Part shown: positions 607 through 15,432 of the stretch, in pieces
Layout: each line of letters begins with the position of its first letter
Numbering within the stretch: the stretch's first letter is position 1
Origin: Oikopleura dioica
Lineage: Eukaryota > Animalia > Chordata
NCBI GenBank assembly: GCA_907165135.1
Contig: OU015568.1
Span: forward strand, 8,494,001-8,558,000
DNA: 64,000 bases
Direction of reading: 5' to 3'
Notes under the pieces: generated by a model
What the model was told of the DNA's origin: nothing
Seen by the model: only the letters and a program-made list of their open reading frames with translations
Database searches by the model: none
Translations under genes and position numbers: made by a program

Positions 607-3600
607 TCATTTCAAATTCAATTTGGCAGAAAAGATACTTCGGATAAGGGAAAGTTGCGAAGAAAGCCCTGCTCCGGGTGGAAGAATATCGTGTAGGGCC
701 TTTTCGGATTCTAGTTTTGACAGAATTTGTTGCCAGATTTGAACTGCTTCTTTGGTTGTTGCTGGTGTTTTGGAAGACGCGAAGATTTCTTCTATCGTTG
801 ATTCTATCAGCTTTCTTGCTTTATCATTACGAGCTACGTATTCGGGCATCTAAAAGAGATTGAGGAAAAAGTGATTTTCGACATGACAGTTGACATTTTA
901 CCTTGTACTCTTTATCCTTCAAGAAAACGACCAACGCCGTTATGTTATCCATCGAACCACGAGAGAAACTCGTATCAACCATTCTCCAGGCTACTTCTTC
1001 GTTTTTCCCGAAAACGCTTGCCTCAAAATGTGCATATTTCGCCGCTTCGGCGCTGGTTAAAACATCGAAAACGCCATCGCTTCCGAGAACGAGTAGACTG
1101 TCGCTTTCTTCGCGAGGGATGATTGTACAGGTTGGTGCTGCGATGACTGGCTGAAAGAGGTCGTGGTAGCGTCTTGAGGGCCATGTTCCTTCGGAATTCG
1201 GCTTGAGATCTAAATCCATTGTCAAATTTGAGAAGATTTGGAAGACGCGATATTTCTGTCTATATCTTTCGATGATGTACCAAAATCACCAAAAGCGCGA
1301 CTGAGAGCAAGATTTCCATTGACTCGATTGTATCTTACAAAGCCGCCAGTTTCATAAATGCGTTTTCTTTCCTCTGTATCCATCGGCTTATGATCTTCTG
1401 TTGAAAACTTGAGCTCAGAAGACTCATCTATTCAATAGTTCAAAATAGTTTTGTTCACTATCTAAAAACAAAAGTTCGAACCGTGCCCACAAGCAGCGTT
1501 CTTGAGTCCCCGACATTCGCAAAGATGAAATTCTTCGGCGTCATCAGCACAGAGGAACACGTGCTTCCGGAACGGAGACCACTGGCCCTAATCTCGCGAT
1601 CGAACTCGAGATAAGCGCGCTCTATTTCGGAAGAAATTTCTTCCGCACTTGCATCTGAAACAATATTGCAGATAGGGATCGAACGCAAATCAAAATGGGA
1701 ATTTTTAAAAATAAAGATATGCCTTTTATATTAAAAATTAAAATAGTAAATCGATTATGCTGATCTCAAATATGATAATCATATTGTATTTCAACTTCCG
1801 GTTTCCCGGAAACTGTCGGTTTCAGCGGCTTCCTGTGGACGCGCAATCTTGCGCCAATAACAGCAGGTTAATGAGCATTGGAAAAAGGATTTTCGAAGAA
1901 AAATATTGAAAATCGATGGCGCGTGGTTGCGCTTGCCTTTTGTACTTCTGAAGTATGACTCATGAAGCGGCGGCAAAAGCGCATAGCCCGCGTCAATGCG
2001 CGTGCGCGAAGGCGCCAGAGAGAGGCGCACGAAAAAATTGAAAAAGATGAGCGCGCCGCGATTCGAACCCGCCCCACCAGATAGACATGGTCCTATCAAT
2101 TGACAACCAGGCTATTGGAACTTGGGGAGACGCCCTTTTTCGTGGGTATAAATTATCTGCTTCTTTTTCTTTCTTCAGTAAAACTCCCTTAACCTTACGA
2201 CCACAAACGGGATTTTCACCTACCGGGTACTTTTTCGTCATTTTTTTCCAAAAAGTCAAATTTTTAAATGCGAGTCGAGATAGACTCCCAAAATGCGTCA
2301 AAATCGACTTTTGACCCGTAGAATCCATTTCCGGGCTCAAATTTGTGAAATTCCGCAAACAGATTTTTCGAAAATTGTTGACGGGGAGGGGGGTCCTTAA
2401 TCGAATTTCCTTCAACAAGAAGATCAAAAAATGCACAGACACAATTTTTCGAGCCAAAAAAAGAAATGATAATAAGTAAATTTTTTAAAAATTTTGATTT
2501 TCATAATTAGAAATTAAAAAATAAATAAGTTAGTTGTAAGATAAAAACCATAACAAAGCAAGAAACTGGATAAACTTTAATTTTAATGAAAACGGGTGTG
2601 GGTGGGGTTGGGGACAAAACTGAGATTGATCACCTCAGAGTTTAAAGTTTAAACCTTCTGTCAAGCCCTTTTCGAAGGGCCGTCAAGCCCCTTAAAATTA
2701 AAAATCAAGGAACGGGGCTGAGACGGCCCGAAGGGCCGTCAAGCCCCTTAAAATTAAAAATCAAGGAACGGGGCTGAGACGGCCCGAAGGGCCGTCAAGC
2801 CCCTTAAAATTAAAATCAAGGAACGGGGCTGAGACGGCCCGAAGGGCCGTCAAGCCCCTTAAAATTAAAAATCAAGGAACGGGGCTGAGACGGCCCGAAG
2901 GGCCGTCAAGCCCCTTAAAATTAAAAATCAAGGAACGGGGCTGAGACGGCCCGAAGGGCCGTCAAGCCCCTTAAAATTAAAAATCAAGGAACGGGGCTGA
3001 GACGGCCCGAAGGGCCGTCAAGCCCCTTAAAATTAAAAATCAAGGAACGGGGCTGAGACGGCCCGAAGGGCCGTCAAGCCCCTTAAAATTAAAAATCAAG
3101 GAACGGGGCTGAGACGGCCCGAAGGGCCGTCAAGCCCCTTAAAATTAAAATCAAGGAACGGGGCTGAGACGGCCCGAAGGGCCGTCAAGCCCCTTAAAAT
3201 TAAAAATCAAGGAACGGGGCTGAGACGGCCCGAAGGGCCGTCAAGCCCCTTAAAATTAAAAATCAAGGAACGGGGCTGAGACGGCCCGAAGGGCCGTCAA
3301 GCCCTTAAAATTAAAAATCAAGGAACGGGGCTGAGACGGCCCGAAGGGCCGTCAAGCCCCTTAAAATTAAAATCAAGGAACGGGGCTGAGACGGCCCGAA
3401 GGGCCGTCAAGCCCCTTAAAATTAAAAATCAAGGAACGGGGCTGAGACGGCCCGAAGGGCCGTCAAGCCCTTAAAATTAAAAATCAAGGAACGGGGCTGA
3501 GACGGCCCGAAGGGCCGTCAAGCCCCTTAAAATTAAAAATCAAGGAACGGGGCTGAGACGGCCCGAAGGGCCGTCAAGCCCCTTAAAATTAAAAATCAAG

Positions 3601-6600
3601 GAACGGGGCTGAGACGGCCCGAAGGGCCGTCAAGCCCCTTAAAATTAAAAATCAAGGAACGGGGCTGAGACGGCCCGAAGGGCCGTCAAGCCCCTTAAAA
3701 TTAAAAATCAAGGAACGGGGCTGAGACGGCCCGAAGGGCCGTCAAGCCCCTTAAAATTAAAAATCAAGGAACGGGGCTGAGACGGCCCGAAGGGCCGTCA
3801 AGCCCTTAAAATTAAAATCAAGGAACGGGGCTGAGACGGCCCGAAGGGCCGTCAAGCCCCTTAAAATTAAAAATCAAGGAACGGGGCTGAGACGGCCCGA
3901 AGGGCCGTCAAGCCCCTTAAAATTAAAATCAAGGAACGGGGCTGAGACGGCCCGAAGGGCCGTCAAGCCCCTTAAAATTAAAAATCAAGGAACGGGGCTG
4001 AGACGGCCCGAAGGGCCGTCAAGCCCCTTAAAATTAAAAATCAAGGAACGGGGCTGAGACGGCCCGAAGGGCCGTCAAGCCCCTTAAAATTAAAAATCAA
4101 GGAACGGGGCTGAGACGGCCCGAAGGGCCGTCAAGCCCCTTAAAATTAAAATCAAGGAACGGGGCTGAGACGGCCCGAAGGGCCGTCAAGCCCCTTAAAA
4201 TTAAAAATCAAGGAACGGGGCTGAGACGGCCCGAAGGGCCGTCAAGCCCTTAAAATTAAAAATCAAGGAACGGGGCTGAGACGGCCCGAAGGGCCGTCAA
4301 GCCCCTTAAAATTAAAAATCAAGGAACGGGGCTGAGACGGCCCGAAGGGCCGTCAAGCCCTTAAAATTAAAAATCAAGGAACGGGGCTGAGACGGCCCGA
4401 AGGGCCGTCAAGCCCCTTAAGGGGGTCGACGAGAATCGGGATTTCTGTGACCAAAAATGCGGGAAAACCGGATTAGATAGGGACAATCTGATGTTATTGG
4501 TGGATAGAAAAGGGTTGAAAAAATCAGGCGGCGAAAACTAGAAAAAATTTTCGCCAGAAAAAATCGGTCAAAAATCCCCTCAAAGTAGGGGCATTTTCGC
4601 GAAAATGCACCAAAAATGGCGATTTTTTTCACATTTTTCTTAATTTCACCCCCTAAATCTCATTTTTATCAAATGTTTTTAGGCTCAACAGATTCGGGAG
4701 GATCTGACAATTCCAAAAATATAAGTTTCATATCCAGACTATGAGTACAAGCGAAATTACGATCACCCCTGAAAAAATTCTCGTCGACCCCCCCCCTTAA
4801 AATTAAAAATCAAGGAACGGGGACCAAAATCAAGTGATCCCTTCTTCAAAATGACTCGATATCGAATCACGTGCTCAACGGCGGACCAGGATACCTGAAC
4901 CGAAGAAGACGTTATCTCCTCGATATTAACTCCACTTCCGCTTGGTGCTGTTTCTTCAGTGAAAATGACAGCGTCGGTTTCAGCATTAGCGACAAGTGCT
5001 GAGATCGCAATCTCGTACTTGGTCAGAGGGATCATTTGAGTGAGTCGAACAAAGTTAGCAAAGCCACCTTGGAGCCCGTTGGTAATTGATGCAATTGGTG
5101 GTTCCACGACGACTCGCAGATCCTTGGCACCCATAACGTAACCGAGAGCGATGGCGATCTGCGATGACTGCAGGAGGGCGACTCTTGAGTTTTCGAGAAG
5201 TGGTGCCGTCTTGGGAATACTGAAGACCTTGTCTGTCTTTCCGTGATAACCTGAAGCTCCACTGGATGAATAAGTGGCAGTCATAACGATCGAATAGATT
5301 GTGTTTGGAGTAGCACCGTCAAGTAACAGCGGACTCTCAAGCTCGACCATATTTCCATCAAAGTTGGGAATCGGTGGATTGATCAAAATATTGTAGAAGT
5401 CTGGTTTGGTAGCAACATCCCAGGTAAGTGTCAGTGATGTCGATCGCGCTTTCGCAGAGAAGTTATCTAGAGATGGAACTGTGGAATTATGTAAATTTCG
5501 CCCCTAAAACATATCTTTATCACATGATTTTAGGCTTAACTTCTCAATACACGGGCGCGCGACTAAGCGCTCAAAACACGGGGTCGGGAAAACCGACCAC
5601 CAGGCATTATTCAGCCCCGCGCGGCGCGCCGAATCCTGAGTGCGAAAAATAGCACCGAAGGTTTTGATCTCTTATTCATATTTCCGTCAAGATAATAAGG
5701 CGAAAAAGATACTGTTAGAAAGCTTGAACACTCAGCTATCCATTTATGTAATTATCACGGAAAAATAACTTTCCGATTTTCCGATAAAGAGCGTGAGAGA
5801 AATCTCGTGCAAAACGCCATCCCTCTTGAGAATCTTCACGAAACTTCGCAGAGTGGTTTGATTTGTTCATATGAGTATACATTGCAAAAATTGGGTCAAA
5901 CGGATTACCACATTCGAAGTTATTGAGGGCCAAAGTCGCCGTGGTCGGTTTTACCGACCACGTGTATTGAGAAGTTAACAGATTCGGCAGTACAGTTCAT
6001 ATGCAGACTATCTGTAGAAGTGATATTTTGATCACCCTGAAAGAAATTCTCGTCGAGATCTGGTTAAAGCCATCACACTCTCAGGAATGTATGGCTCAGT
6101 TGGTATCTGATAGGAACGGGACTTCTTAGTGAAGCGCGTTCGATTCCCGACGAGACCATTTTTTTTTCAATTTCTATTGGTCAGGGCGCGGGCTCGCTCG
6201 CAGGAAAAGTCAAAACGCGTCGCGGCAAAAGCTTCTCGCCCCGGAGCGCCACCCTTTGCGTGACACTTCTCCGCGCTGCGCGCTTCTCATTGGCCCTTTT
6301 CCTCTTCTCTCTTTATTTTTCAAAGTGTAATAACTCAAAAACTACAACACCTATGAAAATTTAAAATTCATATTTGAAAAGCCTGAGCCTCAAAACCCAT
6401 TTTTTCATTTATAAGTTTAGAAAAAAATTTTTTGGGTGCCCCGGTGGTGATTTGCGTTCGATCCCTAATTGCAGATAAGTGCCACATCCAGTTAGAACCT
6501 GATTTAATGAGGGAGCCGAGCTTCTTCTCGAGGAACTGTGGTAAGTTCTTAGAGCAGTACTGGGCGACGCGGTAATCTAAAGAGACAAAACATGTTGAGT

Positions 6601-6990
6601 ATCTTTGGCTTAGTATCTTTTACGAACCAACATGGCCATCAAGGACGGCGAAAAAATGATACCCAGGGGAATCGCAAAAATCCAGCTTCACGGCTGTATA
6701 GTCCTTTTATCAAGAGTTTTAAACTTAATGATTTGTAAAGAATGCTGCGTTTTGCGCAACTCTTTCCTCCATATACGGTCTGTAGAAAGTTTTACAAAAG
6801 AAAATTACGAATAAAATCGCTGAAAAAGTGGGTCTCTCAAAACTCTTTCCTGTATCCTTGAATTCCACAAGAAGTGTAATAAATCTCCCGCTTAGCATCT
6901 TCAAACTGTATTTTTGTCAATACAGGGACAGCAGCGAAACGAATCGAGTTGATACCAAGACGGAGAAAGCGCTTTCCAAAAGCCCACTAG
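607..6990 (-). CDS. PPM1A/B: PP2C/PPM-family Ser/Thr phosphatase, PPM1A/B-like, multi-exon
   Basis: Spliced motifs appear in the expected order: QGYRPYME|D (6860-6700), FFAVLDGH (~6650), [10 protein letters not shown] (~6560), [17 protein letters not shown] (1458-1650), DHKP...[14 protein letters not shown] (1280-1400), GSDGVFD and SMDNIT (900-1100). The C-terminal LPPGAGLSS resembles the PPM1A/B C-terminal domain. The 5' end is unresolved and may extend to ~7390. Confidence 0.9.
2041..2121 (-). ncRNA. tRNA-like Pol III cassette (A box, B box, T-run) in the left subterminal region of the hAT-like element
   Basis: Minus strand: TAGCCTGGTTG (2114-2104), GGTTCGAATC (2069-2060), then TCTTTTT. 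The spacing is tRNA-like, but no cloverleaf forms. Confidence 0.5.
2594..2613 (+). other. Potential G-quadruplex
   Basis: GGGTGTGGGTGGGGTTGGGG: four G-tracts with 1-3 nt loops, about 50 bp before the tandem array. Confidence 0.55.
2660..4822. repeat. 56-bp tandem array (~31 units) with an internal perfect hairpin
   Basis: Unit AAGCCCCTTAAAATTAAAAATCAAGGAACGGGGCTGAGACGGCCCGAAGGGCCGTC. Units differ only in C-run and A-run length. The last unit is split by the 4421-4796 MITE and resumes at 4797-4822. Confidence 0.97.
4421..4796. mobile_element. MITE with TTAA target duplication (Kolobok-like termini)
   Basis: TTAA (4417-4420), GGGGGTCGACGAGAAT...ATTCTCGTCGACCCCC(CCCC), TTAA (4797-4800). The repeat unit continues exactly after the second TTAA. 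A TTAA TSD with purine-starting TIRs fits Kolobok better than piggyBac. Confidence 0.8.
4823..5462 (-). pseudogene. Fibronectin type III gene fragment (about 2.5 repeats), intronless, carried inside the hAT-like element
   Basis: Open frame [31 protein letters not shown]...[12 protein letters not shown]...[14 protein letters not shown]...[23 protein letters not shown] shows FN3 W/Y spacing. Both ends run into repeat or MITE DNA. Confidence 0.7.
5490..6063. mobile_element. Left-truncated, diverged relative of the 4421-4796 MITE, itself interrupted by a piggyBac-like MITE
   Basis: Colinear similarity: TTTTAGGCT(T/C)AACAGATTCGG, TTCATAT-CAGACTA and GATCACCC-TGAAA-AAATTCTCGTCGA (6029-6056 vs 4761-4787). 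Ends before TTAA at 6064-6067. Confidence 0.65.
5540..5974. mobile_element. piggyBac-like MITE, 435 bp
   Basis: TTAA (5536-5539), TIR CTTCTCAATACACG...CGTGTATTGAGAAG, TTAA (5975-5978). An internal palindromic repeat (GGTCGG-AAAACCGACCAC) lies ~27 bp from the left TIR but directly against the right TIR. This asymmetric layout is typical of piggyBac ends. Confidence 0.85.
6085..6167 (+). ncRNA. tRNA-like Pol III cassette in the right subterminal region of the hAT-like element
   Basis: A box TGGCTCAGTTGG (6092-6103), B box GTTCGATTCC (6138-6147), then GAGACCA and a T9 terminator. The acceptor and T stems do not pair, so this is not a functional tRNA. Confidence 0.6.
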
Positions 6991-8377
6991 ACGAAAAATG
7001 CTCATAAAAACGTTCATTTTTGATGTTCATACTTTCATGTTATTCTATTTCGTTTCCGATCGATCAAGACACAATCTAAACAGTTGGACTTCTAGCAGTG
7101 CTAATTAAGAAGAAAGCTCAACTCACACGAATACAGCGTGATGGATAGGCTCCATCAAATGAGAGCTCGTCTGCGGTGGAAAAATCCGCGACTTTGTTTG
7201 CGCAATACGATGGAACGTACTCAATAAATTACCCCCTCTGATTTGACCTGATTGTCCTTCCATAAAGGGACGAAAAGTATGAAATTTCCAATTCATCTCG
7301 GATCGTCTCCTTACTACTTTATTTGAGTAAGTCCGCCGGACTCGTAGTATTTGCTCAGAAGAGCTCGGAATGCTTTTTATGGCTGTCATACAAAATCGCC
7401 AACGAGAGTTTGCTGAAAAGCATACTTAAAATTTCGCAAAAGTTTTAATACTAGCTGTTTCTTCTTTGAGCCCACCGAAAAGGACGAAGGTAGAGAGAGA
7501 GAAGGTGGTGGAAAAAACGAGCAGCGGCGCTCTAGGCACACAGGGAGAACGACTGGAGGAGGCCACTACTGGAGCGTGTGCCTAACCAAGGAGTAGCACA
7601 ACAAAAGCTGAGCGCTACTAGCCCCATCACTCTTCTGAAACATCGTTGTGTTTACAGTGCTGAAAGAAGTTAGAGAGTACTGAGAAGAGAGAGAGACGAA
7701 TAAAACTCCCACGAAAGAGAGAAGGCCACAAGACAGAGTACTGATCGAGCAACACCTTCGCATGTCGGCTAACTGGATAACTGGGGAGTGAAAAGCGAGC
7801 TTCACATGAAACAGTTATGTTCATAGAAAGAAGACTCTGGGGACATCTTTTGCTTCTTTCGCTAAGGGTCACTATTTCACAAAAAATGCTAGTTTGATGA
7901 AACTTTGTAAATGACGTAATAGACGTTTGATCTTGACATTAGACAATAATTGTGCTAGAATCAGAAGGAGTGGTACTTGAGTCGAGAACAAGCACACTTG
8001 AAAGGGCCGTGACGCGGCGGTAACAACTGTAATCGACATTTGGAAAGTCAATTCCAAATTGAACAATTGTTCGTGCAAAAGGTCGATGGGTATAATTGCC
8101 CTTGGCCCTGAGCCATAAGCCCGATTGAAATATTAGTTGATTTTCGGTCATGGGCTCTAATTTATGGGCGTAGCGGGACATCCCACATGTAGCTAGTACA
8201 ACTAGTGATCCAAGAAAAAGGTAACTATCTCGGCCAGATACACGAATAGCCGACAAGTCAACAACTTCGGATCTGCAGTTCGGCAACCAAGAAAGTCTTC
8301 GTGTGCTAAAAGCGATGGGAAAAGTAAAGGCTCAGAGGTATTGAATTTCCATCCGGCGAATAAACTCTAAAATAATC

Positions 8378-9117
8378 ATGGTTCAGAGGCCCCATGATAA
8401 ACCATTCAAGCCGTATTCTAACGACACGAATTTCGACGAATTCCTAGACCTCAGCAGTCCAGTAACTTCATTGACAAGACGAAGAAAAAGGGACTTGGAC
8501 TGGTTCTCACTTGCATCCGGGCTTCCACAGTCAGATACATTTTACACGCCTTGGATAAAAGAGGTTGAAATGACATTTTAAAACAAGAAAATGAGTGATT
8601 GTTTAAGAAATGTTACAGAACGATGATTGACTTTGGCAAGAATCTCGCAAATAATGCTGACTCACTTGCAGAATGCTTGGGTTTTAAATTAGAAGCTGAA
8701 CCTCTTTATATTCCAAAGGTAGAAGGGGTTAACAATCAAGGAGGATCTAAACAAGAATGTAGCCTAAAATCGTCATTGTAAAAACTTGGGAAGAGGAAAA
8801 GAAGAAGAAGAGAAAGCAAAAATATCGAAAAAAGAGAAGTCTTTATTTTCAACGATCATGTCATAGACACAGAGTTCATGCAGAAGGTAAGCTAGAAAAT
8901 TCATGTTACGGGTGAAAATATTATTTAAGGGCGTGCGATTGATTTACAAATAAATTGGCTAACGGATGAAAGAATAATGAGCAAGATCGAAAACGCTGGT
9001 AAACGCGAACAACTATTCCGAAACCTGCAAAAACTGGCAGAGCAGAGCTTCGATTTCGTAAAAATTATTCGATCTTCATCGAAACCTACAGTGCTCCACG
9101 TGTCCTGCACAGGTTAA
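8378..9117 (+). CDS. hh: Highly divergent hedgehog-like protein (Hedge signalling domain; no Hint/Hog domain seen)
   Basis: Introns 8564-8607, 8719-8762 and 8887-8929 (44, 44 and 43 nt, all GT-AG) splice to WIKE|KCYRTM...|PKIVIVKTWEEE...RVHAE|GRAIDLQI...LQKLAEQSFDFV...VLHVSCTG. This matches Shh TQ|RCKDKL..KLRVTEGWDED..LHYEGRAVD..LARLAVEAGFDWV..HIHCSV. The N-terminal exons are unresolved (one probably ends at 8337). Confidence 0.72.
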
Positions 9118-9603
9118 ACTGCAAACTTGCCCAGTACAAAATTGGTCGGAACCGGTGAAATCTAAGCAAACATGTAAAAAAGAATAAAAAAACGAAACCT
9201 AGCGATAACCTTTTCGCTAATTTTTGACTGCCGTATATTTGTAAAGTAAGGTTTTCATTTCATTGAGTGTTCTCAATCACTCGGCACTAGAACTATTCCT
9301 ACTCGTATTCATTTCTTCTCACTTCCCAAAACTGAGTATCCTGATACTCCTCGTTGTTCTCAAAGTCTTTTCTCTCTCCATGTTTATACTCACACTCGCT
9401 ACAGTACATAAAATAAACTAATTCGAAAACTAGAGCTCTGTACATCGGCTTCTATATTTACAGTAACAGGTAGACCAAACGGTAAAGTGTATACAAATAC
9501 AGTAAATAGCAGTAGTTGAGGTAGTTGAAACGCCGGAGGAAAAGCAGTGAACTTTGACTATTTATTTTTCAAGGAATGCGACCTTCTGGAGCTCCATTCT
9601 CCA

Positions 9604-12600
9604 TCACGATAAGCTGGACTCGGAAGTACTAAAAGATTTTTTAATGCTTGATTATAAATGAGCGGCACAGCGACTGTATAATCGATCCTCACCTCAGATC
9701 TCGATCCAGCGAGCTAGAAGTGGCCTCCAAAGGTGGCTCAACAAGATGGAGCGTTTTCTTTGGAGTCACTATCAGCGAATTAAGCACTTTGCGGTCGTCT
9801 TCGCTGAGGTTGATGTTGAATATTTGGTGGCTGACTTTCGCGGCAAAATCGAAAGAGATGACAACTTTTTCTGATCCGATCAAGTGCGCGACCAAGGAGG
9901 AGTTCAACATTGCAACTAGTACGCCGAATGAAAGAGGAGCTCCAAAATAGCTACGAATTTCATTAGAAAAATCGAGAAAAATGAGGGATGTACCTTGAAA
10001 TTGCCGAAAATGGCGAGCAGAGGAGAAAAATCAGCGGACAAAAACAAACAAGAGCCAGGCCAAGTTGAATTTGCGGGGTGTTGATTAATGGAACGTCGAC
10101 TTTGTTCAAGGACAAGAACACCGCCGGGTATAATGAGGCCAGCAAGCACCCAGCCAGAGTGAGCTGATTGAAGGGGATATTACAGAATGAAGTGAGCCCA
10201 ACGACTTGAAATAACGAGACAATCCAAACCGCAACCTACGATAGTTGTCGAAATAAATTACAGTCAGATTCTTTCGCTAATTTGATTTATAATCAACGGG
10301 CTAATAACTCACCGATAGAAACGAGAACATCATATCTGCATGTATAAGACCACCTAAAAACACGCCAAGAATGACGAAGCCGGCATAGGCGGCGATAGTA
10401 GATGGATCGGTCACGTTCTGTAGATATCCGAGCGCGTCGATTTCTGCTCCAGTGAGTTTTGCGTGCTTCATTTCGATAGAGATTCTCTGAAAATAGGAGT
10501 GTCAAAAGTTTTCTCAAATAAAATATGACTTACTTCTTGGAAATCTTTAAAGTCATCCATTTTCAAGCCAAAATCGTTAACAACTAATCGCACAGGCAGT
10601 TTGAGCATTTTCTTCGCATTTCTTTGAAACGGCCTGTAGTCGAGCATTTTATTGAGAGCAGTGGTAGGGCAGTTCTTTAACTTTTCAAGCGGCATCATTG
10701 TGTTTTTCTTCTTGCTGATGATTTCGGAGTAAGACGGAATCCAGCCAAATATTTCAAACTCTGTTTTCAATCTCAATTCGGCGCGGTTCAGATAAATCCA
10801 GGTTGCCAAAAGCGTCTCGTACTCTCCAGATTGGCGATCGAACGTCTTCTCCCTTCTTCCAGTTTTGTTGATAGCGTAGATTAGAATTCTCTCAATGGAC
10901 TCAGTAATATCTGATGCTTTCAAATCTCGACGGACATCTTTCTTTCTTAGACGGTTGACTGCAGCTCTGCATTCCCATTCCGTCACGTCTTCAACGCGGA
11001 CCTTTTCGTCGACCCAGGTCTTGAAGTTGTAAAACCAGAACTCTTTGTCGATCGACATTGATTGATGGAACTGACTTGATGAAGCGATTCGATGAGCATT
11101 CGCCAATTCATCGTGTAAATCGGTCGTTTCGTTGACATCGAGTTCCAGCATCGTTTTATGGACCGGAAAGTACGTTTCTATGAAGACTTGAGAATTTCAT
11201 CAAAATATAAAATCGATTTTTTGGAGAATATGTTCCATTTTAAAGATTCTCTTGAGATTCAAGCCTTTCCTTGGATACGCGCCGCAACATAATTGTGAGA
11301 TGTCTTCGGAATGAAATCGAAATTGCGGACAGAGATGTCGAATCGAAGCGCCAGACCGACTGCAGCCAGGATCGTTATCGAAACAGCAAGGACCACTCTC
11401 ACCGCCGCCCATAATAGCGTGCAGTAGAATTTCGCCCTGTGTGGCAGCATTATTTCTCTAAGATTCCTTTAGCTTCTGCCAGTCAAAAGAAGATATACCT
11501 GGTTCGATTGGACATGTATTTCGAGAGGCGGTGGACCTCGAAGACTTTCGGGACGATGCAAATGATGAAGAACATGAAGAAAATCGACATGATCAAGAAT
11601 TCACTTCCAAAATGCTCGAGCGTCGTGTTAGTTTTCGTCCAGTAAACTAATCCAAGCCCGAAAAGAGAGGACATCGATAAAACGATGGTTGGAAAGGTGT
11701 GGATGAAGATTTCTCCCATAGAAGTGGTATTTTTAGCTCGATACAGGTGACCAAATGTCGCAACGACTCCTAGGATGAGACCACCTGCGATAGATTGAAG
11801 AAGCGGACCACCAACATGCGAGATAAATGGGTCCAATTTCGCCTCAGCGTGAGTTTTCGCCTAAAGAATGATAATGATTTTGGCAATTAGCGAATTTCAA
11901 TGGTATGGGAGCACAATTATTGCACTAGGACTCACAGAAAGCGCGTAGTTGATGATGATGGAGGACCACCCTGTTGTAAAAGATCCAAAAACAAAGAAAT
12001 TCGAAATGGCGAAAATAGCGCTTAACAGAAGAGGGTGACTTAGCCCGGAAACAGCGACGATAAAGTAGACAATCCCGGTTGAAACCATCAAATATGGGGT
12101 CACCGCCAAAAAGCTAGAGTAAAAATAAGATTCTCTCCATTCAAAATCGATATTACCTTTCTTTGATATTCAGATTTTCGAGCTGGACGAAGTTTGGACA
12201 GTAGAAAAACGCATTTTCGTGAGATTCAACCACATTTTCTACATTGTTGAGGAAAGTTTCCAAAAGTTCTGCAGCGAGTTCGGGCGTCCAGAAAACTAAT
12301 GACTTGATGATTAACTCAAAGAGGAATTTATTACCTTGTCGTCCTGCGGAATTTCTCTTCAAGGGCTGATTGCTGAGCGTGTTTGAGTAGAAGTCGTAGA
12401 GAGAGTTTGCCGCCATGAGGTTAATAGTTGTTTGCAGGTATCCTTGATCGTTGATAGTTCTTTCCGTTGAATGAGAGATTCCAACGCTATTGCATGAACT
12501 TGACGATGAGATTCTACGAGATGTCAAGAGCGAATCGTTATCTTCGAAATACTCGTCGATAGAAATCTTTCTCGAGAAGTCAGAGAGGCCTGATAATGAG

Positions 12601-13674
12601 GAGTATCCACAAGGAGTGTCATCAGCCCAAGAAAATTTTCCATCGGTGCCAAGGCAATATTTTTCTCTGTTGTATATCAAAAGATCTTCGCCTTCACTGA
12701 AACAATTGAGGGGCGTGTCGACAATGCATGGAGCCAAATCGTTCTGAAAAAACTGGGAAAATTCGGTATCCAGCTTCGTTGTGAGTTCAATGTCTTCGCT
12801 CAATTTGAAACCAGTTGCTTTGTGACAGAGGCTCTCGATTGTCCATGTTCTTTGCCATTAACATGAGTTGCATTAAAAACTTTAAGATTTACCTTTCAAA
12901 AAAGGAAACAGATGTAGCAAGAACAGCTTGAACCACGGCTTGATGATGTAAAAGTGCCGACTTTGTAATGCCTTCTCTCGAATCGTCCGCATGTGTCATC
13001 ACATTCAGCATAAAATTACCCCACGTTGCGTTGACCCCTGAAATTGACGTGTGGTTCGACTTCCTGTGCTAAGGATCCTTCACTTGACACCTACTGTATT
13101 TAGGAAGGGCCTACTGAAGCCATGATCAAGCCTATTTCTACAGTACTTTCTTCATAACGCAAAATGCATCTCACCTGGGTTAACTTTTTGTTGCCTCGAG
13201 TAGACTATCAATTCGTCATTCTCACAGTACGTTATTGCGACGAGCCCGATTAGGAATGAGAATATGAAGAATACAGAAAACGAGGACTGCCTTTCGATCA
13301 AACTGCCAAGGCGGTACAGAAACTTGTGCCATTGATGCTTCACATCGTACTTTAATCTTCTCTTTTTTGGCTGAGGGATGAGGCACTAGAAAGTTGATAG
13401 AAAAAATTGATCTTATAATACTACATAGGAAATAAATATAGCGAGTAAATACTTTTTCGGAGTTATTTTGCACCAGACTTCGAGAACTATCTTCACATGT
13501 ATATTCAGAATCTGTCTCTGGCATCGTGTCACTGTCGCACCGCGGATAGTCACTGATTCTATCAGTCTCTCTCACACGCTCTTCTCTAGTACGTAAGTCT
13601 TCCTTGCGATTACTCGCATTCTCCTCTATGTTTGCAGTTTTCTCCCCTTCGTTTAGGGGGACTGTTTGGGTCAT
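9604..13674 (-). CDS. ptch: Divergent Patched-family 12-TM Hedgehog receptor
   Basis: Motifs colinear with PTCH1: KFLYRLGSLIERQ (LLFKLGCYIQKN), ITKSALLHH (LTTEALLQH), RTWTIESLCHKA (RQWKLEHLCYKS), PCIVDTPLNCFSEG (PCLIITPLDCFWEG), DFIPKTS (DIVPRET), FWFYNFKTWV (MWLHYFRDWL), LLATW (YLTAW), and IRSYFG..LVAMLNS (TM12). Two TM clusters (11260-12110 and 9880-10420). Confidence 0.88.
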
Positions 13675-13715
13675 CTTTGTTGAGGGGCTATGTCTAAACT
13701 GGCGTTATTTCTCGA

Positions 13716-14308
13716 GACCACACGGCCCCACTGGGTGGCAGATTACCACCCAACAGCGTAAAATGGATATTTGCACTTGGTCCTCTCTCTCGTCCGGGGT
13801 GGGCCGGTGATCTTCTCTGTTTTTCCCGTATTTCACCGCACTGGCTTTTTGTCCACTTGGTGGTGAAAATGATTGAGTAGCGCTGGACAAATTCAAAAGA
13901 GGAAAATCTAGCGCGAAATCTCTCAGAGGGCGACGGATGAACCACAAAATGATGGTGCTAATCCTCCAAGTGTTAAAGTAGCTGGATCAGGGCTCAGTCA
14001 CTACGGTAGTGAAATTAATTCCGATAACGCCACCCACGGGCAGAGGAAAACGCCAGAAGAGTCACTGACCACCTACCGATTCTCTTATCTCTTCTCCCAG
14101 AAAGAAAAAAAAAACGTAAAACAAAACCCCTTTGAGAGAGAAAATGCTTGACTTACCCTGAAAGTCACAGCTGTGAGTGCGGGAAAGTGAGGGTAACGCT
14201 CGACATTTCTTTCGCCAGTTCAAAAAAAATCGAGAAAAGATTTCCGCTATCTATAAAGGCAGATGAGCGGATGGTGGCATCATGCCATCGACGAGAACGG
14301 GCCACCCA
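13716..14308. promoter_or_regulatory. Cluster of near-consensus Gli sites upstream of the patched-like ATG
   Basis: Compared with GACCACCCA: TACCACCCA 13744-13752, GACCACCTA 14067-14075 and GGCCACCCA 14300-14308 (1 mismatch each); GACCACACG 13716-13724, TGCCACCCA (reverse strand) 13732-13740 and CGCCACCCA 14028-14036 (2 mismatches each). Confidence 0.45.
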
Positions 14309-15432
14309 GAGAGCGCAAATTAATCAACTCTCATAAATTAATAAACTCGCTGATAAAAACACCTTTATGGAAGGAAGTAACTTAGGACTATAAAAATTTC
14401 ATCACTTCCAAAGTTTCAAGTCTCGATTTCTACATCATCACTTTCAAATTTAACAAGCGTAAAAGCGAAAAACATAGAAAATATTTCAAACGCATTTTTA
14501 CGAGTCAATCCGGCCGTCAACTTTCAAAATACTCACGTTTGACGAGTCATTTATCCTTTTCTCCATTCCCACAAGAACCGCGCTTTTTCTCAAAAGCCAA
14601 TATCAATCTGCTTACATTTCTATCTCTCCTTGTCCACAAATGTTAGAGGGAGTCAACGGTGCGAGAAATTTTGTTGATTAATCTGATTTCAATTTTACGA
14701 GCTGGTCTCTCTGTCTGAGGCAGTAGGATTTTTTTCTTTTTCAATTTGTAAAAAAAATGGATCGTCCCACGCTCGACCACCGAGTTCGGGGAGCAATTGT
14801 AAAGATTGAACATCATCAGCGTCTTTTTAGAAAGGGAAATGAACGTCAAGAGGAATTCGGTTTGCATGTTTATCGCATTCCGGAGTTGGGAAGCAATAAG
14901 TGCTCTTGGCTTTTGCGAATCCTGGTGAATTCAGTTACTTGAATTTTTTACGTAGTATTTTGCGAGATTATCAAAATTATGCGAGATTGGTAGTAGAAAT
15001 TTTGTTCCAAATATCAGTCTAACAACAATCCGTGGAGGCTGAGGTCAGGGTCGTCCTTTTGAGGTCAGTTTAGCCAATTTTTTTACTCCTAGACACACTG
15101 AAAGTGCCTACAAGCCTTATTCCGAGGCAGAGTTAGCGACGATACGTCAGTTAAAACATCGGTCCCTGCATTCCTGATCATTCTTATGGTCTGTAGCTAC
15201 AGACCTACAGACTCTGTAGTACTGCTTGTATGAAGAAAGCGTAGTTAATGAAGTTACCTTTTATTGCACATAATATTATGGGAAACAGAGTCGATCTGAT
15301 AAGGATCGTCACCGAAGTGAAGCAGAGTCGCAGACTCTGGCTGGGTCACAAGAAACTGGAACAAGAACTTGAGCAGGAGCATTGCGCCAGAAGAAATAAA
15401 GAAAAAAGAATAGTTAAAATAGTAAAAAATGG

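What the first reader, a model, noticed from the sequence alone, without database searches (positions are those of the whole stretch)
8378..14308. Candidate linked ligand-receptor module: hedgehog-like and patched-like genes tail-to-tail
The hh-like stop (9117, +) and the ptch-like stop (9604, -) are only ~490 bp apart, so their 3' UTRs may overlap. In the chordate genomes I know, hh and ptch are unlinked. Both proteins here are very divergent, in ways that may be complementary: the ligand lacks the Hog domain and the receptor has remodelled loops and a short tail. Gli-like sites lie upstream of ptch. Inference: a co-evolving, possibly co-regulated Hedgehog cassette, or a re-purposed non-canonical pathway, in a lineage known for losing developmental genes.
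Basis: partly seen in the sequence, partly recalled or inferred. Interest (0 to 1): 0.9.

Follow-up and report, generated by a model that had tools for sequence, protein, structure and literature searches.

The report
Hog-less hedgehog beside divergent patched
In the tunicate Oikopleura dioica, said in the literature to lack hedgehog, a small secreted protein with a very divergent hedgehog signalling domain and no self-processing half is encoded tail-to-tail, 486 bases apart, with an equally divergent patched-like membrane protein.

Summary
The window is Oikopleura dioica OKI2018_I69, chromosome PAR. The + gene (g10799, stop 9115-9117) and the - gene (stop 9604-9606) are real. They lie tail-to-tail, 486 nt apart, and have the same arrangement in the Norwegian genome.

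The + gene encodes a secreted protein of about 255 aa. It is conserved in at least four lineages or samples and is seen as spliced mRNA. Pfam and PDB sequence searches do not recognise it. A clean profile-profile comparison aligns its C-terminal ~115 residues end to end with the hedgehog N-domain core (hhalign probability 82-86%, P 5e-6 to 1e-5; shuffled null maximum 21.6 against 38.5). It fits hedgehog far better than an M15 peptidase profile (P 0.056). ESM Atlas models give the Hedgehog/DD-peptidase fold. The protein ends where hedgehog exon 2 ends, so it has no Hog/Hint half, and it has no N-terminal CGPG cysteine.

The - gene (12 exons, 1116 aa in my model) has the 1+5(6)+1+5 TM layout with two large loops. 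Its first loop matches PTCH1 specifically (E 0.005). It has no Pfam Patched or SSD hit; the only hit on record is TRA2_N.

Homology is supported. Co-regulation, co-evolution and binding are untested. This scan also noted the hh-like gene separately on the same window (s1-357666).

The parts
7817..7867 (+). Probable true first coding exon of the hh-like gene. It encodes the signal peptide MFIERRLWGHLLLLSLR, followed by donor GTCACT.
   Evidence: Matches the N-termini of metatranscriptome orthologues P0007/P0008 (MFIEGLWRHLLLLS.., MFIGGLWRRLFLL..) and an exon at L003 9488-9544 in the Norwegian genome. Joined to 8221 it gives an open 255-aa frame. The annotation does not use it.
7911..7915 (+). 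Annotated first coding exon of g10799 (ATGAC, donor GTAATA).
   Evidence: The exon set reproduces P0001 exactly.
8221..8337 (+). hh-like exon 2 (the annotated form starts at 8238). It encodes the N-terminal, fast-evolving region.
8387..8563 (+). hh-like exon 3 (RPHDKPF...YTPWIKE).
   Evidence: blastn does not align it to the Norwegian locus.
8608..8718 (+). hh-like exon 4 (KCYRTMIDFGKNLANNADSLAECLG...LYIPK). This is the helix that precedes the hedgehog core.
8763..8886 (+). hh-like exon 5: PKIVIVKTWEE, a basic insert, then QRSCHRHRVHAE. It holds the first half of the metal-site motif.
   Evidence: hmmsearch and hhalign put KIVIVKTWEE on the hedgehog consensus vrlrVTEgWDE, and VHAEGRAID on LHYEGRAVD.
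8930..9117 (+). hh-like last exon: (G)RAIDLQINW...LAEQSFDFVKI...LHVSCTG, then the stop. It ends where hedgehog exon 2 ends, and no Hog/Hint coding follows.
   Evidence: Orthologues end at the same point (HVSCDDTD stop).
9118..9603 (.). 486-nt spacer between the two stop codons. It is transcribed and conserved, and at least 293 nt of it is hh-like 3' UTR.
   Evidence: 74% identity to Norway over 531 nt. The mRNA contig L001 aligns to window 9143-9410. Sister-lineage RNA reads cover 9159-9308 and 9507-9592.
9604..13674 (-). ptch-like gene, my model: 12 exons, 1116 aa. Exons: 13674-13453, 13385-13175, 13037-12893, 12849-12157, 12113-11936, 11860-11499, 11457-11270, 11186-10534, 10486-10313, 10235-9994, 9950-9693, 9628-9604.
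   Evidence: Single open frame. Collinear tblastn to the Norwegian gene at 48-91% identity per exon. Junctions 13175|13037, 12893|12849, 10313|10235 and 9994|9950 are supported by loose ends of RNA reads.
12157..12849 (-). Exon encoding most of the first extracellular loop, with the Patched-specific stretch RTWTIESLCHK...APCIVDTPLNCFSEG.
   Evidence: PDB searches: 12 of 17 hits (single sequence, best E 0.033) and 13 of 15 hits (two-lineage profile, best E 0.0046) are PTCH1/Patched-1.
11187..11269 (-). Non-canonical GA-AG intron (83 nt) of the ptch-like gene.
   Evidence: It is needed to keep the frame. The Norwegian gene is uninterrupted across this point.
14536..14550 (-). Annotated alternative first coding exon of the ptch-like gene (MTRQT, donor GTGAGT).
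   Evidence: The annotated gene range maps to 9604-14550 with a 1111-aa product. Sequence.
13744..13752 (+). GLI-like 9-mer TACCACCCA, 70 nt upstream of ATG 13674. A second one, GACCACCTA, lies at 14067-14075.
   Evidence: Both are kept at matching offsets in the Norwegian locus. They lie in a transcribed stretch.

Best explanation
These are the much-diverged Oikopleura descendants of hedgehog and patched, kept side by side.

Shown: the + gene makes a secreted protein of about 255 aa. Its C-terminal ~115 residues are a hedgehog N-terminal ('Hedge', LAS-fold) domain. That domain keeps the three positions which hold zinc in hedgehog (H in VHAEGRAID, D in AID, H in LHVSC). The protein stops where hedgehog exon 2 stops. 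The - gene makes an ~1100-aa protein with about 12 membrane spans and two large outside loops. The first loop is Patched-like.

Inferred: with no Hog/Hint half and no N-terminal cysteine after the signal peptide, the ligand cannot acquire cholesterol or palmitate. It would therefore be a soluble, lipid-free hedgehog. It could bind the receptor's loops through its metal-site face but could not plug a sterol tunnel. The receptor's membrane part is too diverged for any sterol-sensing or Patched profile to see it, and I saw no acidic residue where I expect the transport motifs. So the pair most likely works as a binding-type ligand-receptor couple with a non-canonical output. The precedent is nematode TRA-2, a Patched relative that signals through its tail to the Gli protein TRA-1. 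A canonical Patched-Smoothened sterol relay is less likely.

The close tail-to-tail placement and the conserved, transcribed spacer allow shared 3' regulation. That is not shown.
For: Organism and genes: P0001 = OKI2018_I69.PAR.g10799; same order PP2C | hh-like | ptch-like | Sec7 in OKI and Norway.

Coding and expression of hh-like:
- Orthologues P0002, P0003, P0005-P0010.
- An uninterrupted ORF on the 1169-nt Tara metatranscriptome contig L001.
- dN/dS 0.42 overall and 0.23 in the C-terminal core.

Signal peptide.

Hedgehog homology:
- A hedgehog-core HMM built from 22 real hedgehogs scores the five Oikopleura proteins at 11-15 bits, p 1e-6 to 2e-5.
- hhalign gives probability 86.5%, P 4.5e-6, 79 columns, and probability 82%, E 1e-5 with the session tool.
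- 300 column-shuffled profiles reach at most 21.6 against 38.5.
- The M15 peptidase profile gives only P 0.056.

Fold: ESM Atlas TM 0.51-0.56 to M15/VanY/DUF5715 and to chordate and arthropod hedgehog models.

Patched:
- PDB hits are almost only PTCH1, best E 0.0046.
- Hydropathy layout.
- The TM exons are the best-conserved parts between lineages, 80-91%.
- Pfam TRA2_N is on record for both annotated products.
- TRA-2 is 'distantly related to Patched' (PMC12719749).
Against: - Pfam HH_signal does not hit any family member at E <= 10.
- A family profile finds no hedgehog in the PDB or among 5.8 billion proteins at E <= 1.
- Both AlphaFold runs were low confidence (pLDDT 45 and 51) and their fold searches were meaningless.
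- The language-model feature search ranks phage M15_3-like clusters (0.92-0.93) above hedgehog (0.89).
- Both hhalign profiles are shallow (Neff 1.5 and 1.8).
- The hedgehog hypothesis was framed after the EGRA.D motif had been seen.
- For the receptor, only one stretch of ~70 residues matches PTCH1. The second loop and the TM4-6 and TM9-11 exons hit nothing, and no Patched/SSD Pfam hit is on record.
- Nothing shows binding, co-expression at cell level or 3' UTR overlap.
- No Smoothened, Gli or Dispatched search of this genome was possible.
Confidence: 0.62

Rival explanations
1. The + gene encodes a LAS-fold (M15 peptidase-like) secreted protein that does not descend from hedgehog. It could be an old transfer from bacteria or phages, or a bacterial-type HH_signal protein. 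Its place beside the patched-like gene would then be coincidence.
For: ESM feature search: the top clusters are phage M15_3-like (0.92-0.93), ahead of hedgehog (0.89), and bacterial HH_signal models match as well as animal ones. Pfam HH_signal does not hit.
Against: - hhalign favours the hedgehog core (P 4.5e-6) over the MepK/phage M15 profile (P 0.056).
- The motifs that set hedgehog apart from M15 are of the hedgehog type: W-E-E not G-Y-R, FDFV not GGVG, and H-V-S-C, as in the real hedgehogs P0065, P0072 and P0080.
- tblastn against 50,697 phage records finds nothing in the core.
- The gene has five spliceosomal introns, and its coding sequence ends where hedgehog exon 2 ends.
- Only one M15 subfamily was tested, and bacterial HH_signal proteins were not.
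Confidence: 0.17
2. Both genes are true hedgehog and patched descendants but no longer work together. They are fast-drifting remnants, or have separate new jobs. They stay adjacent only because the whole block has not been broken.
For: - The whole 20 kb is collinear between OKI and Norway, so the adjacency is not special.
- hh-like is the fastest-evolving gene of the block: ~50% aa identity against 91% for Sec7.
- The lipid-modification features of the ligand and the recognisable transporter features of the receptor are gone.
Against: - Both are under purifying selection: dN/dS 0.23 in the Hedge core, and TM exons 80-91% identical.
- Both are transcribed.
- The metal-site residues are invariant in all family members.
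- The spacer and 3' UTR are more conserved than synonymous sites (89% identity against dS 0.48).
Confidence: 0.3
3. The - gene is not a Patched orthologue. It is another RND/SSD-type protein (Ptchd/Ptr, Dispatched or NPC1-like) that shares one short motif with PTCH1.
For: No Pfam Patched or Sterol-sensing hit on record. Only ~70 residues of loop 1 match PTCH1, with E 0.005-0.03.
Against: NPC1, NPC1L1, DISP1 and PTCHD1 are, to my knowledge, among solved structures. None appears among the hits, which are nearly all PTCH1/Patched-1. The matched stretch (W.[LI]E.LC.K ... PC[IL][IV].TPL[DN]CF.EG) is, from my knowledge of the family, the Patched loop-1 signature.
Confidence: 0.12

Closest known systems
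Hedgehog proteins (HH_signal N-domain plus Hog/Hint C-domain), e.g. Shh, and Ciona Hh1/Hh2
   Same: It is a secreted protein. Its core aligns end to end with the hedgehog N-domain core, with the H-D-H metal positions kept. The helix-strand order is the same in all predictions. The exon starting X-C (KCYR against RCKD) and the end of the coding sequence lie at or near the two hedgehog exon-2 borders.
   Different: - It has no Hog/Hint half and no G|CF cleavage site, so it cannot take cholesterol.
- It has no CGPG cysteine after the signal peptide, so it cannot take palmitate.
- A 20-35-residue basic insert lies between WEE and the H..EGRA.D motif.
- A ~16-residue insert lies after the motif.
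- The N-terminal half is unalignable.
- Pfam does not recognise it.
Patched (PTCH1, Drosophila Ptc)
   Same: The layout is one TM, a large loop, five or six TMs, one TM, a large loop, five TMs. The first loop matches PTCH1 specifically.
   Different: It is ~1100 aa with a ~66-residue tail. No Patched or sterol-sensing profile hits it. I saw no acidic residue in the spans where I expect the GxxxD/E transport motifs; this is by eye and memory, with no alignment.
C. elegans TRA-2 / HER-1 / TRA-1
   Same: TRA-2 is a Patched-derived receptor, diverged beyond easy recognition, that binds a small secreted protein and acts without Smoothened (PMC12719749). The only Pfam family on record for the Oikopleura receptor is named TRA2_N.
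   Different: HER-1 is not a hedgehog relative. I could not read the definition of PF27572 or reproduce the hit on single exons, so the link is a lead only.
Hedgling and nematode hedgehog-related genes (warthog, groundhog)
   Same: They are examples of the Hedge and Hog halves living apart (from my own knowledge).
   Different: In Hedgling the Hedge domain sits on a large cadherin. Nematode genes keep Hog and lose Hedge. Here a free-standing Hedge domain is kept in a chordate.
M15 / LAS zinc peptidases (MepK, VanX/VanY, phage endolysins)
   Same: The fold and the H..G.A.D motif are shared.
   Different: The hhalign match is poor (P 0.056). It lacks the SG.R and H.D motifs seen in the MepK/phage set.

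Membership tests
Hedgehog N-terminal signalling domain (Pfam PF01085 HH_signal) | Hit to the curated Pfam HMM | tested here: not met
   0 families at E <= 10 for P0001, P0002 and P0003, and for single exons.
Hedgehog N-terminal signalling domain (Pfam PF01085 HH_signal) | Profile-level similarity over the whole core | tested here: met
   hhalign probability 82-86%, P 4.5e-6 to 1e-5, 73-79 columns covering template positions 7-86 of 86. Shuffled null maximum 21.6 against 38.5. Hedgehog-core HMM p 1e-6 to 2e-5.
Hedgehog N-terminal signalling domain (Pfam PF01085 HH_signal) | Hedgehog/DD-peptidase (LAS) fold | tested here: inconclusive
   ESM Atlas models give TM 0.51-0.56 to LAS families, including chordate and arthropod hedgehog. 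My two AlphaFold models were too poor to use.
Hedgehog N-terminal signalling domain (Pfam PF01085 HH_signal) | Zinc-site positions H...D...H | tested here: met
   H170, D177 and H229 of P0001 are invariant in the family. They align with the H and D of LHYEGRAVD and with an H of HIHCS.
Full-length Hedgehog | C-terminal Hog/Hint autoprocessing domain with a G|CF site | tested here: not met
   The ORF stops 2-4 residues after HVSC in OKI, Norway and the metatranscriptome mRNAs. No Hint Pfam hit.
Full-length Hedgehog | Signal peptide followed directly by the palmitoylated Cys (CGPG) | tested here: not met
   A signal peptide is present. The first Cys of the 255-aa alternative model is residue 45, well past the signal peptide, and there is no CGPG. 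No signal-peptide predictor was available.
Patched (Pfam PF02460 Patched / PF12349 Sterol-sensing) | Hit to the Pfam Patched or SSD HMM | tested here: not met
   The precomputed list for the 1111-aa and 1103-aa products holds only PF27572 TRA2_N. Exon-wise scans found nothing.
Patched (Pfam PF02460 Patched / PF12349 Sterol-sensing) | Twelve-span layout with large loops after TM1 and TM7 | tested here: met
   Hydropathy peaks at 106-131, 424-596 (five or six), 612-647 and 911-1049 (five). Loops of ~290 and ~260 aa.
Patched (Pfam PF02460 Patched / PF12349 Sterol-sensing) | Patched-specific sequence in the first extracellular loop | tested here: met
   PDB phmmer E 0.033 and two-lineage profile E 0.0046. 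12 of 17 and 13 of 15 hits are PTCH1/Patched-1.
Patched (Pfam PF02460 Patched / PF12349 Sterol-sensing) | Acidic transport residues in TM4 and TM10 (GxxxD/E) | tested here: inconclusive
   No D/E in SSIIINYALS or LTLAGCLLASLYPAVFLSL. However, no alignment to PTCH1 TMs could be obtained; the placement is from memory.
Patched (Pfam PF02460 Patched / PF12349 Sterol-sensing) | Binds hedgehog | not testable with these tools
M15 (LAS) zinc peptidases | Profile similarity and the SG.R / H.D motifs | tested here: not met
   hhalign against MepK plus 7 phage homologues gives probability 1%, P 0.056. The family has SWEE and HVS at those places.
TRA-2-like receptors | Pfam PF27572 TRA2_N | tested here: inconclusive
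   It is listed unmarked (E <= 1e-5) for both annotated products. It was not reproduced on any single exon, and I could not read the family's definition.

The most novel reading that the evidence does not exclude
Oikopleura did not lose hedgehog signalling. It rebuilt it as a lipid-free system: a soluble Hedge-only ligand acting on a transporter-dead Patched that signals through binding (TRA-2-like). The two genes would be held together with a shared, conserved and possibly overlapping 3' region that couples their expression.
Probability: 0.2. Interest if true: 0.85.

Novelty: new variant of a known kind. Interest (0 to 1): 0.72.

Why it matters
Oikopleura is the textbook chordate for loss of developmental genes. 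[quoted passage not shown] 2011, PMC3034685). No later paper among those I checked corrects it.

A conserved, expressed, secreted Hedge-only protein beside a Patched relative changes the question. It is no longer 'how does a chordate develop without hedgehog?' but 'what can a hedgehog domain do with no cholesterol, no palmitate and a receptor without recognisable transport motifs?'. That question is directly testable in a tractable animal.

It also bears on the debated lipid-independent (metal-site) mode of hedgehog-Patched binding. And it shows how far a core ligand can drift beyond curated-profile detection.

Tried and rejected
1. By eye I matched 'KVEGVNNQGGSKQE' to hedgehog 'VTEGWDEDGHHSEE' and built micro-exon models around it (one search timed out). 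The annotated protein and its orthologues show that this stretch is the intron 8719-8762. The match was pareidolia.

2. Pfam and PDB searches with single exons, whole proteins and a family profile found no hedgehog. The weak HADH hits are out of order and I regard them as chance.

3. AlphaFold on two shallow alignments gave pLDDT 45 and 51. Foldseek against PDB and Swiss-Prot models gave only noise.

4. The ESM Atlas search on the ptch loop-1 exon was uninformative.

5. PDB searches with ptch loop 2, TM4-6 and a TM9-11 profile found no relevant hit.

6. tblastn of P0006 against phage genomes found nothing in the core.

7. RNA reads: the listed runs belong to the Norway-type lineage, ~25-30% diverged at DNA level. 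Only conserved pieces map, and the libraries are unstranded. So there is no read-out for the hh-like exons and no strand for the spacer.

8. A full-length receptor could not be passed to any search or structure tool. Full-length Pfam, HHsearch, phylogeny and structure steps for the receptor were therefore left out.

Its E-values are circular and are not used as evidence. The stretch proved identical to real entries.

Full report
**What is there**

The window is Oikopleura dioica, Okinawa assembly OKI2018_I69 (GCA_907165135.1), chromosome PAR. A 62-residue translation of the last + strand exon found a 234-aa protein that is 100% identical over those residues. A source names this protein Oidioi.mRNA.OKI2018_I69.PAR.g10799.t1. 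Its encoding contig places window 7911 at position 10001 of locus L002.

They are 486 nt apart.

**The + gene**

The exons 7911-7915, 8238-8337, 8387-8563, 8608-8718, 8763-8886 and 8930-9117 reproduce the annotated protein exactly. All introns are GT-AG; four are 43-49 nt and the first is 322 nt.

Relatives exist in several sources:
- the Norwegian O. dioica genome (P0006, 198 aa, 'unnamed protein product'; P0003, partial);
- a JGI sample (P0002);
- ENA samples (P0009, P0010);
- a Logan assembly of run ERR1719223 (P0005, 255 aa).

P0005 sits on a 1169-nt contig as one uninterrupted frame with UTRs on both sides. That contig is a spliced mRNA.

Between the Norwegian gene and that mRNA, dN/dS is 0.42 overall. 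It is 0.54 in the N-terminal part and 0.23 in the C-terminal core, at dS 0.48. The gene is therefore coding and under purifying selection, but fast-evolving. OKI and Norway share only about 50% of residues. The ptch-like gene shares 71% and the neighbouring Sec7 gene 91%. blastn cannot align exons 2-4, although it aligns the flanking non-coding DNA.

Two metatranscriptome fragments begin MFIEGLWRHLLLLSFTVTAAATN and MFIGGLWRRLFLLTCTVTAAATN, which are plain signal peptides. The window has the matching exon at 7817-7867 (MFIERRLWGHLLLLSLR) and Norway has it at L003 9488-9544. Joined to 8221, it gives an open 255-aa frame. The annotation uses another first exon and so misses the signal peptide. 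I had no signal-peptide predictor; this reading rests on the sequence and its conservation.

**Is it hedgehog?**

Standard tests say no:
- Pfam finds nothing at E <= 10.
- A family profile finds no hedgehog in the PDB.
- The family profile finds none among 5.8 billion proteins at E <= 1.
- My two AlphaFold runs were too poor to use.

One of my own by-eye matches turned out to lie in an intron.

Three other lines say yes.

First, the ESM Atlas holds both P0006 and P0001. Its models match LAS-fold families at TM 0.51-0.56. These include M15, VanY, DUF5715, Extensin-like_C, bacterial HH_signal proteins, and chordate and arthropod hedgehog models. Its feature search lists phage M15_3-like clusters at 0.92-0.93 and a 'Protein hedgehog' cluster at 0.89.

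Second, I ran clean profile tests. I fetched real hedgehog sequences with a bait alignment (its scores are circular and unused). I cut 22 non-redundant cores from them.
- A hedgehog-only HMM scores all five Oikopleura proteins at 11-15 bits, with per-sequence p of 1e-6 to 2e-5. It aligns KLVIIKSWEE with vrlrVTEaWDE, and VHAEGRAIDL with LHYEGRAVDI.
- hhalign of the Oikopleura-only alignment against the hedgehog-only alignment gives probability 86.5%, P 4.5e-6 and score 38.5 over 79 columns. These cover template positions 7-86 of 86.
- The session's own tool gives 82% and E 1e-5.
- 300 column-shuffled hedgehog profiles give a mean of 11.8, SD 2.4 and a maximum of 21.6. The reversed profile gives 13.1.
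- Against a profile of E. coli MepK plus seven phage homologues, the family scores only P 0.056. Hedgehog itself scores P 0.004 against that profile.

Third, the details are of the hedgehog type.
- The motifs are W-E-E, FDFV and H-V-S-C. HVSC occurs in the real hedgehogs P0065, P0072 and P0080.
- One real hedgehog, P0121, carries a long insert in the same loop as the Oikopleura basic insert.
- Many hedgehog ORF fragments start being hedgehog-like at RCK and stop after CSVK[AS]. This marks the exon-2 borders.
- The Oikopleura exon 8608 starts K-C, and the protein ends 2-4 residues after HVSC.

H170, D177 and H229 of P0001 are invariant in the family. They align with the hedgehog residues that I know as the zinc ligands.

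I put descent from hedgehog at about 0.75 to 0.8. The main rival is another LAS lineage.

**What it lacks**

There is no Hog/Hint half and no G|CF site in any lineage. There is no CGPG cysteine next to the signal peptide. From established knowledge of hedgehog processing, this predicts a protein carrying neither cholesterol nor palmitate. That is an inference.

**The - gene**

Twelve exons, from ATG 13674 to the stop at 9604, give one 1116-aa frame. Ten introns are GT-AG and one is GA-AG (11269-11187).

The RNA runs proved to be of the Norway-type lineage, because their loose ends are exact Norwegian sequence. Loose ends of those reads confirm the junctions 13175|13037, 12893|12849, 10313|10235 and 9994|9950.

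The Norwegian gene is collinear with my model from the same ATG. Identity per exon runs from 48% at the N-terminus to 80-91% in the membrane exons, and Norway has no intron at the GA-AG site. The OKI annotation (1111 aa) instead starts with a 5-codon exon at 14550.

Hydropathy gives one span, a ~290-aa loop, five or six spans, one span, a ~260-aa loop, five spans and a ~66-aa tail.

The loop-1 exon hits PTCH1 almost exclusively in the PDB:
- as a single sequence, E 0.033, with 12 of 17 hits being PTCH1/Patched-1;
- as a two-lineage profile, E 0.0046, with 13 of 15 hits.

The alignment pairs W.[LI]E.LC.K and PC..TPL[DN]CF.EG. The other exons hit nothing relevant.

The only Pfam family on record for the two annotated products is PF27572 TRA2_N. 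There is no Patched or sterol-sensing hit, not even a faint one. I could not reproduce or inspect that family. TRA-2 is described as distantly related to Patched and as acting on the Gli protein TRA-1 without hedgehog signalling (PMC12719749).

I put membership of the Patched lineage at about 0.85.

**Linkage and the spacer**

The order PP2C (-), hh-like (+), ptch-like (-), Sec7 (-) is the same in OKI and Norway. The stops are 487 and 465 nt apart by the annotated gene ranges. The whole 20 kb is collinear, so this is no evidence that linkage is selected.

The spacer aligns at 74% over 531 nt between OKI and Norway. It aligns at 89-100% between Norway and the mRNA contig, whose coding dS is 0.48. 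It is therefore more constrained than synonymous sites.

The mRNA contig covers window 9143-9410, so the hh-like 3' UTR takes at least 293 of the 486 nt. Sister-lineage reads also cover 9507-9592 and run on leftwards. The whole spacer is thus transcribed. Overlap of the two 3' UTRs is plausible but unproven, because the libraries are unstranded.

**Gli-like sites**

GACCACCCA with one mismatch or fewer occurs 13 times in the window, against 5.8 expected. One shuffle in 100 reaches 13. Seven matches lie in 10348-14783, all on the + strand, and three of those are inside coding exons. TACCACCCA (70 nt before ATG 13674) and GACCACCTA (about 390 nt before it) are kept at the same offsets in Norway. 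They lie in a transcribed, conserved stretch. Whether Oikopleura has a Gli protein was not testable here.

**Verdict**

The functional part (a co-evolving, co-regulated cassette) is open.

Against the published remark that Oikopleura lacks hedgehog (PMC3034685), a Hedge-only hedgehog relative next to a Patched relative is a new variant of a known system. It is worth a bench test.

Noticed in passing
window 11187-11269 (-): An 83-nt GA-AG intron in the ptch-like gene. The Norwegian orthologue reads straight through this point without an intron.
   Followed up: partly
window 12296-12334 (-): A 39-nt in-frame GT..AG stretch inside the loop-1 exon. The 13 residues it would encode are not conserved in Norway, so it may be a spliced mini-intron. 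My 1116-aa model keeps it.
   Followed up: no
window 1667-6495: This 4.8-kb stretch has no counterpart in the Norwegian locus. The flanks (3-1666 and 6496-8190) align to adjoining Norwegian DNA only ~24 nt apart.
   Followed up: partly
window 9127-9643; L003 10730-11222; L001 922-1169: The spacer and 3' UTR between the two genes is better conserved than the hh-like coding sequence and than synonymous sites. A 98-nt piece (9180-9277) is missing from the sister-lineage RNA reads (joint 9179->9278).
   Followed up: partly
window 8190-8760: blastn does not align hh-like exons 2-4 between OKI and Norway, although the surrounding non-coding DNA aligns at ~70%. The N-terminal half of the ligand evolves unusually fast (dN/dS 0.54 between closer lineages).
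   Followed up: partly
P0008, P0009, P0010 (JGI/ENA contigs): Several environmental transcripts of the hh-like gene end in ..KKVRKVQVHDFSLFLGLLQIDDSFREGFG. This is read-through into the intron after the exon equivalent to 8387-8563, so these are unspliced or intron-retaining forms.
   Followed up: no
window 10348-14783 (+): Seven of the window's thirteen 1-mismatch GLI-type 9-mers fall in the ptch-like locus, all on the + strand. Three sit in coding exons as GGTGGTC on the coding strand.
   Followed up: partly
window 13550-14150 (-): Sister-lineage RNA reads map well upstream of ATG 13674. This lies in what the OKI annotation treats as the first intron, which suggests an alternative start site or a long 5' UTR.
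   Followed up: no
P0121, and P0013 (fetched hedgehogs): P0121 is a real hedgehog fragment with a ~25-residue acidic/serine-rich insert between WTE and SLHFEGRA. P0013 carries a tandem duplication of the Hedge core ahead of its Hint domain.
   Followed up: no
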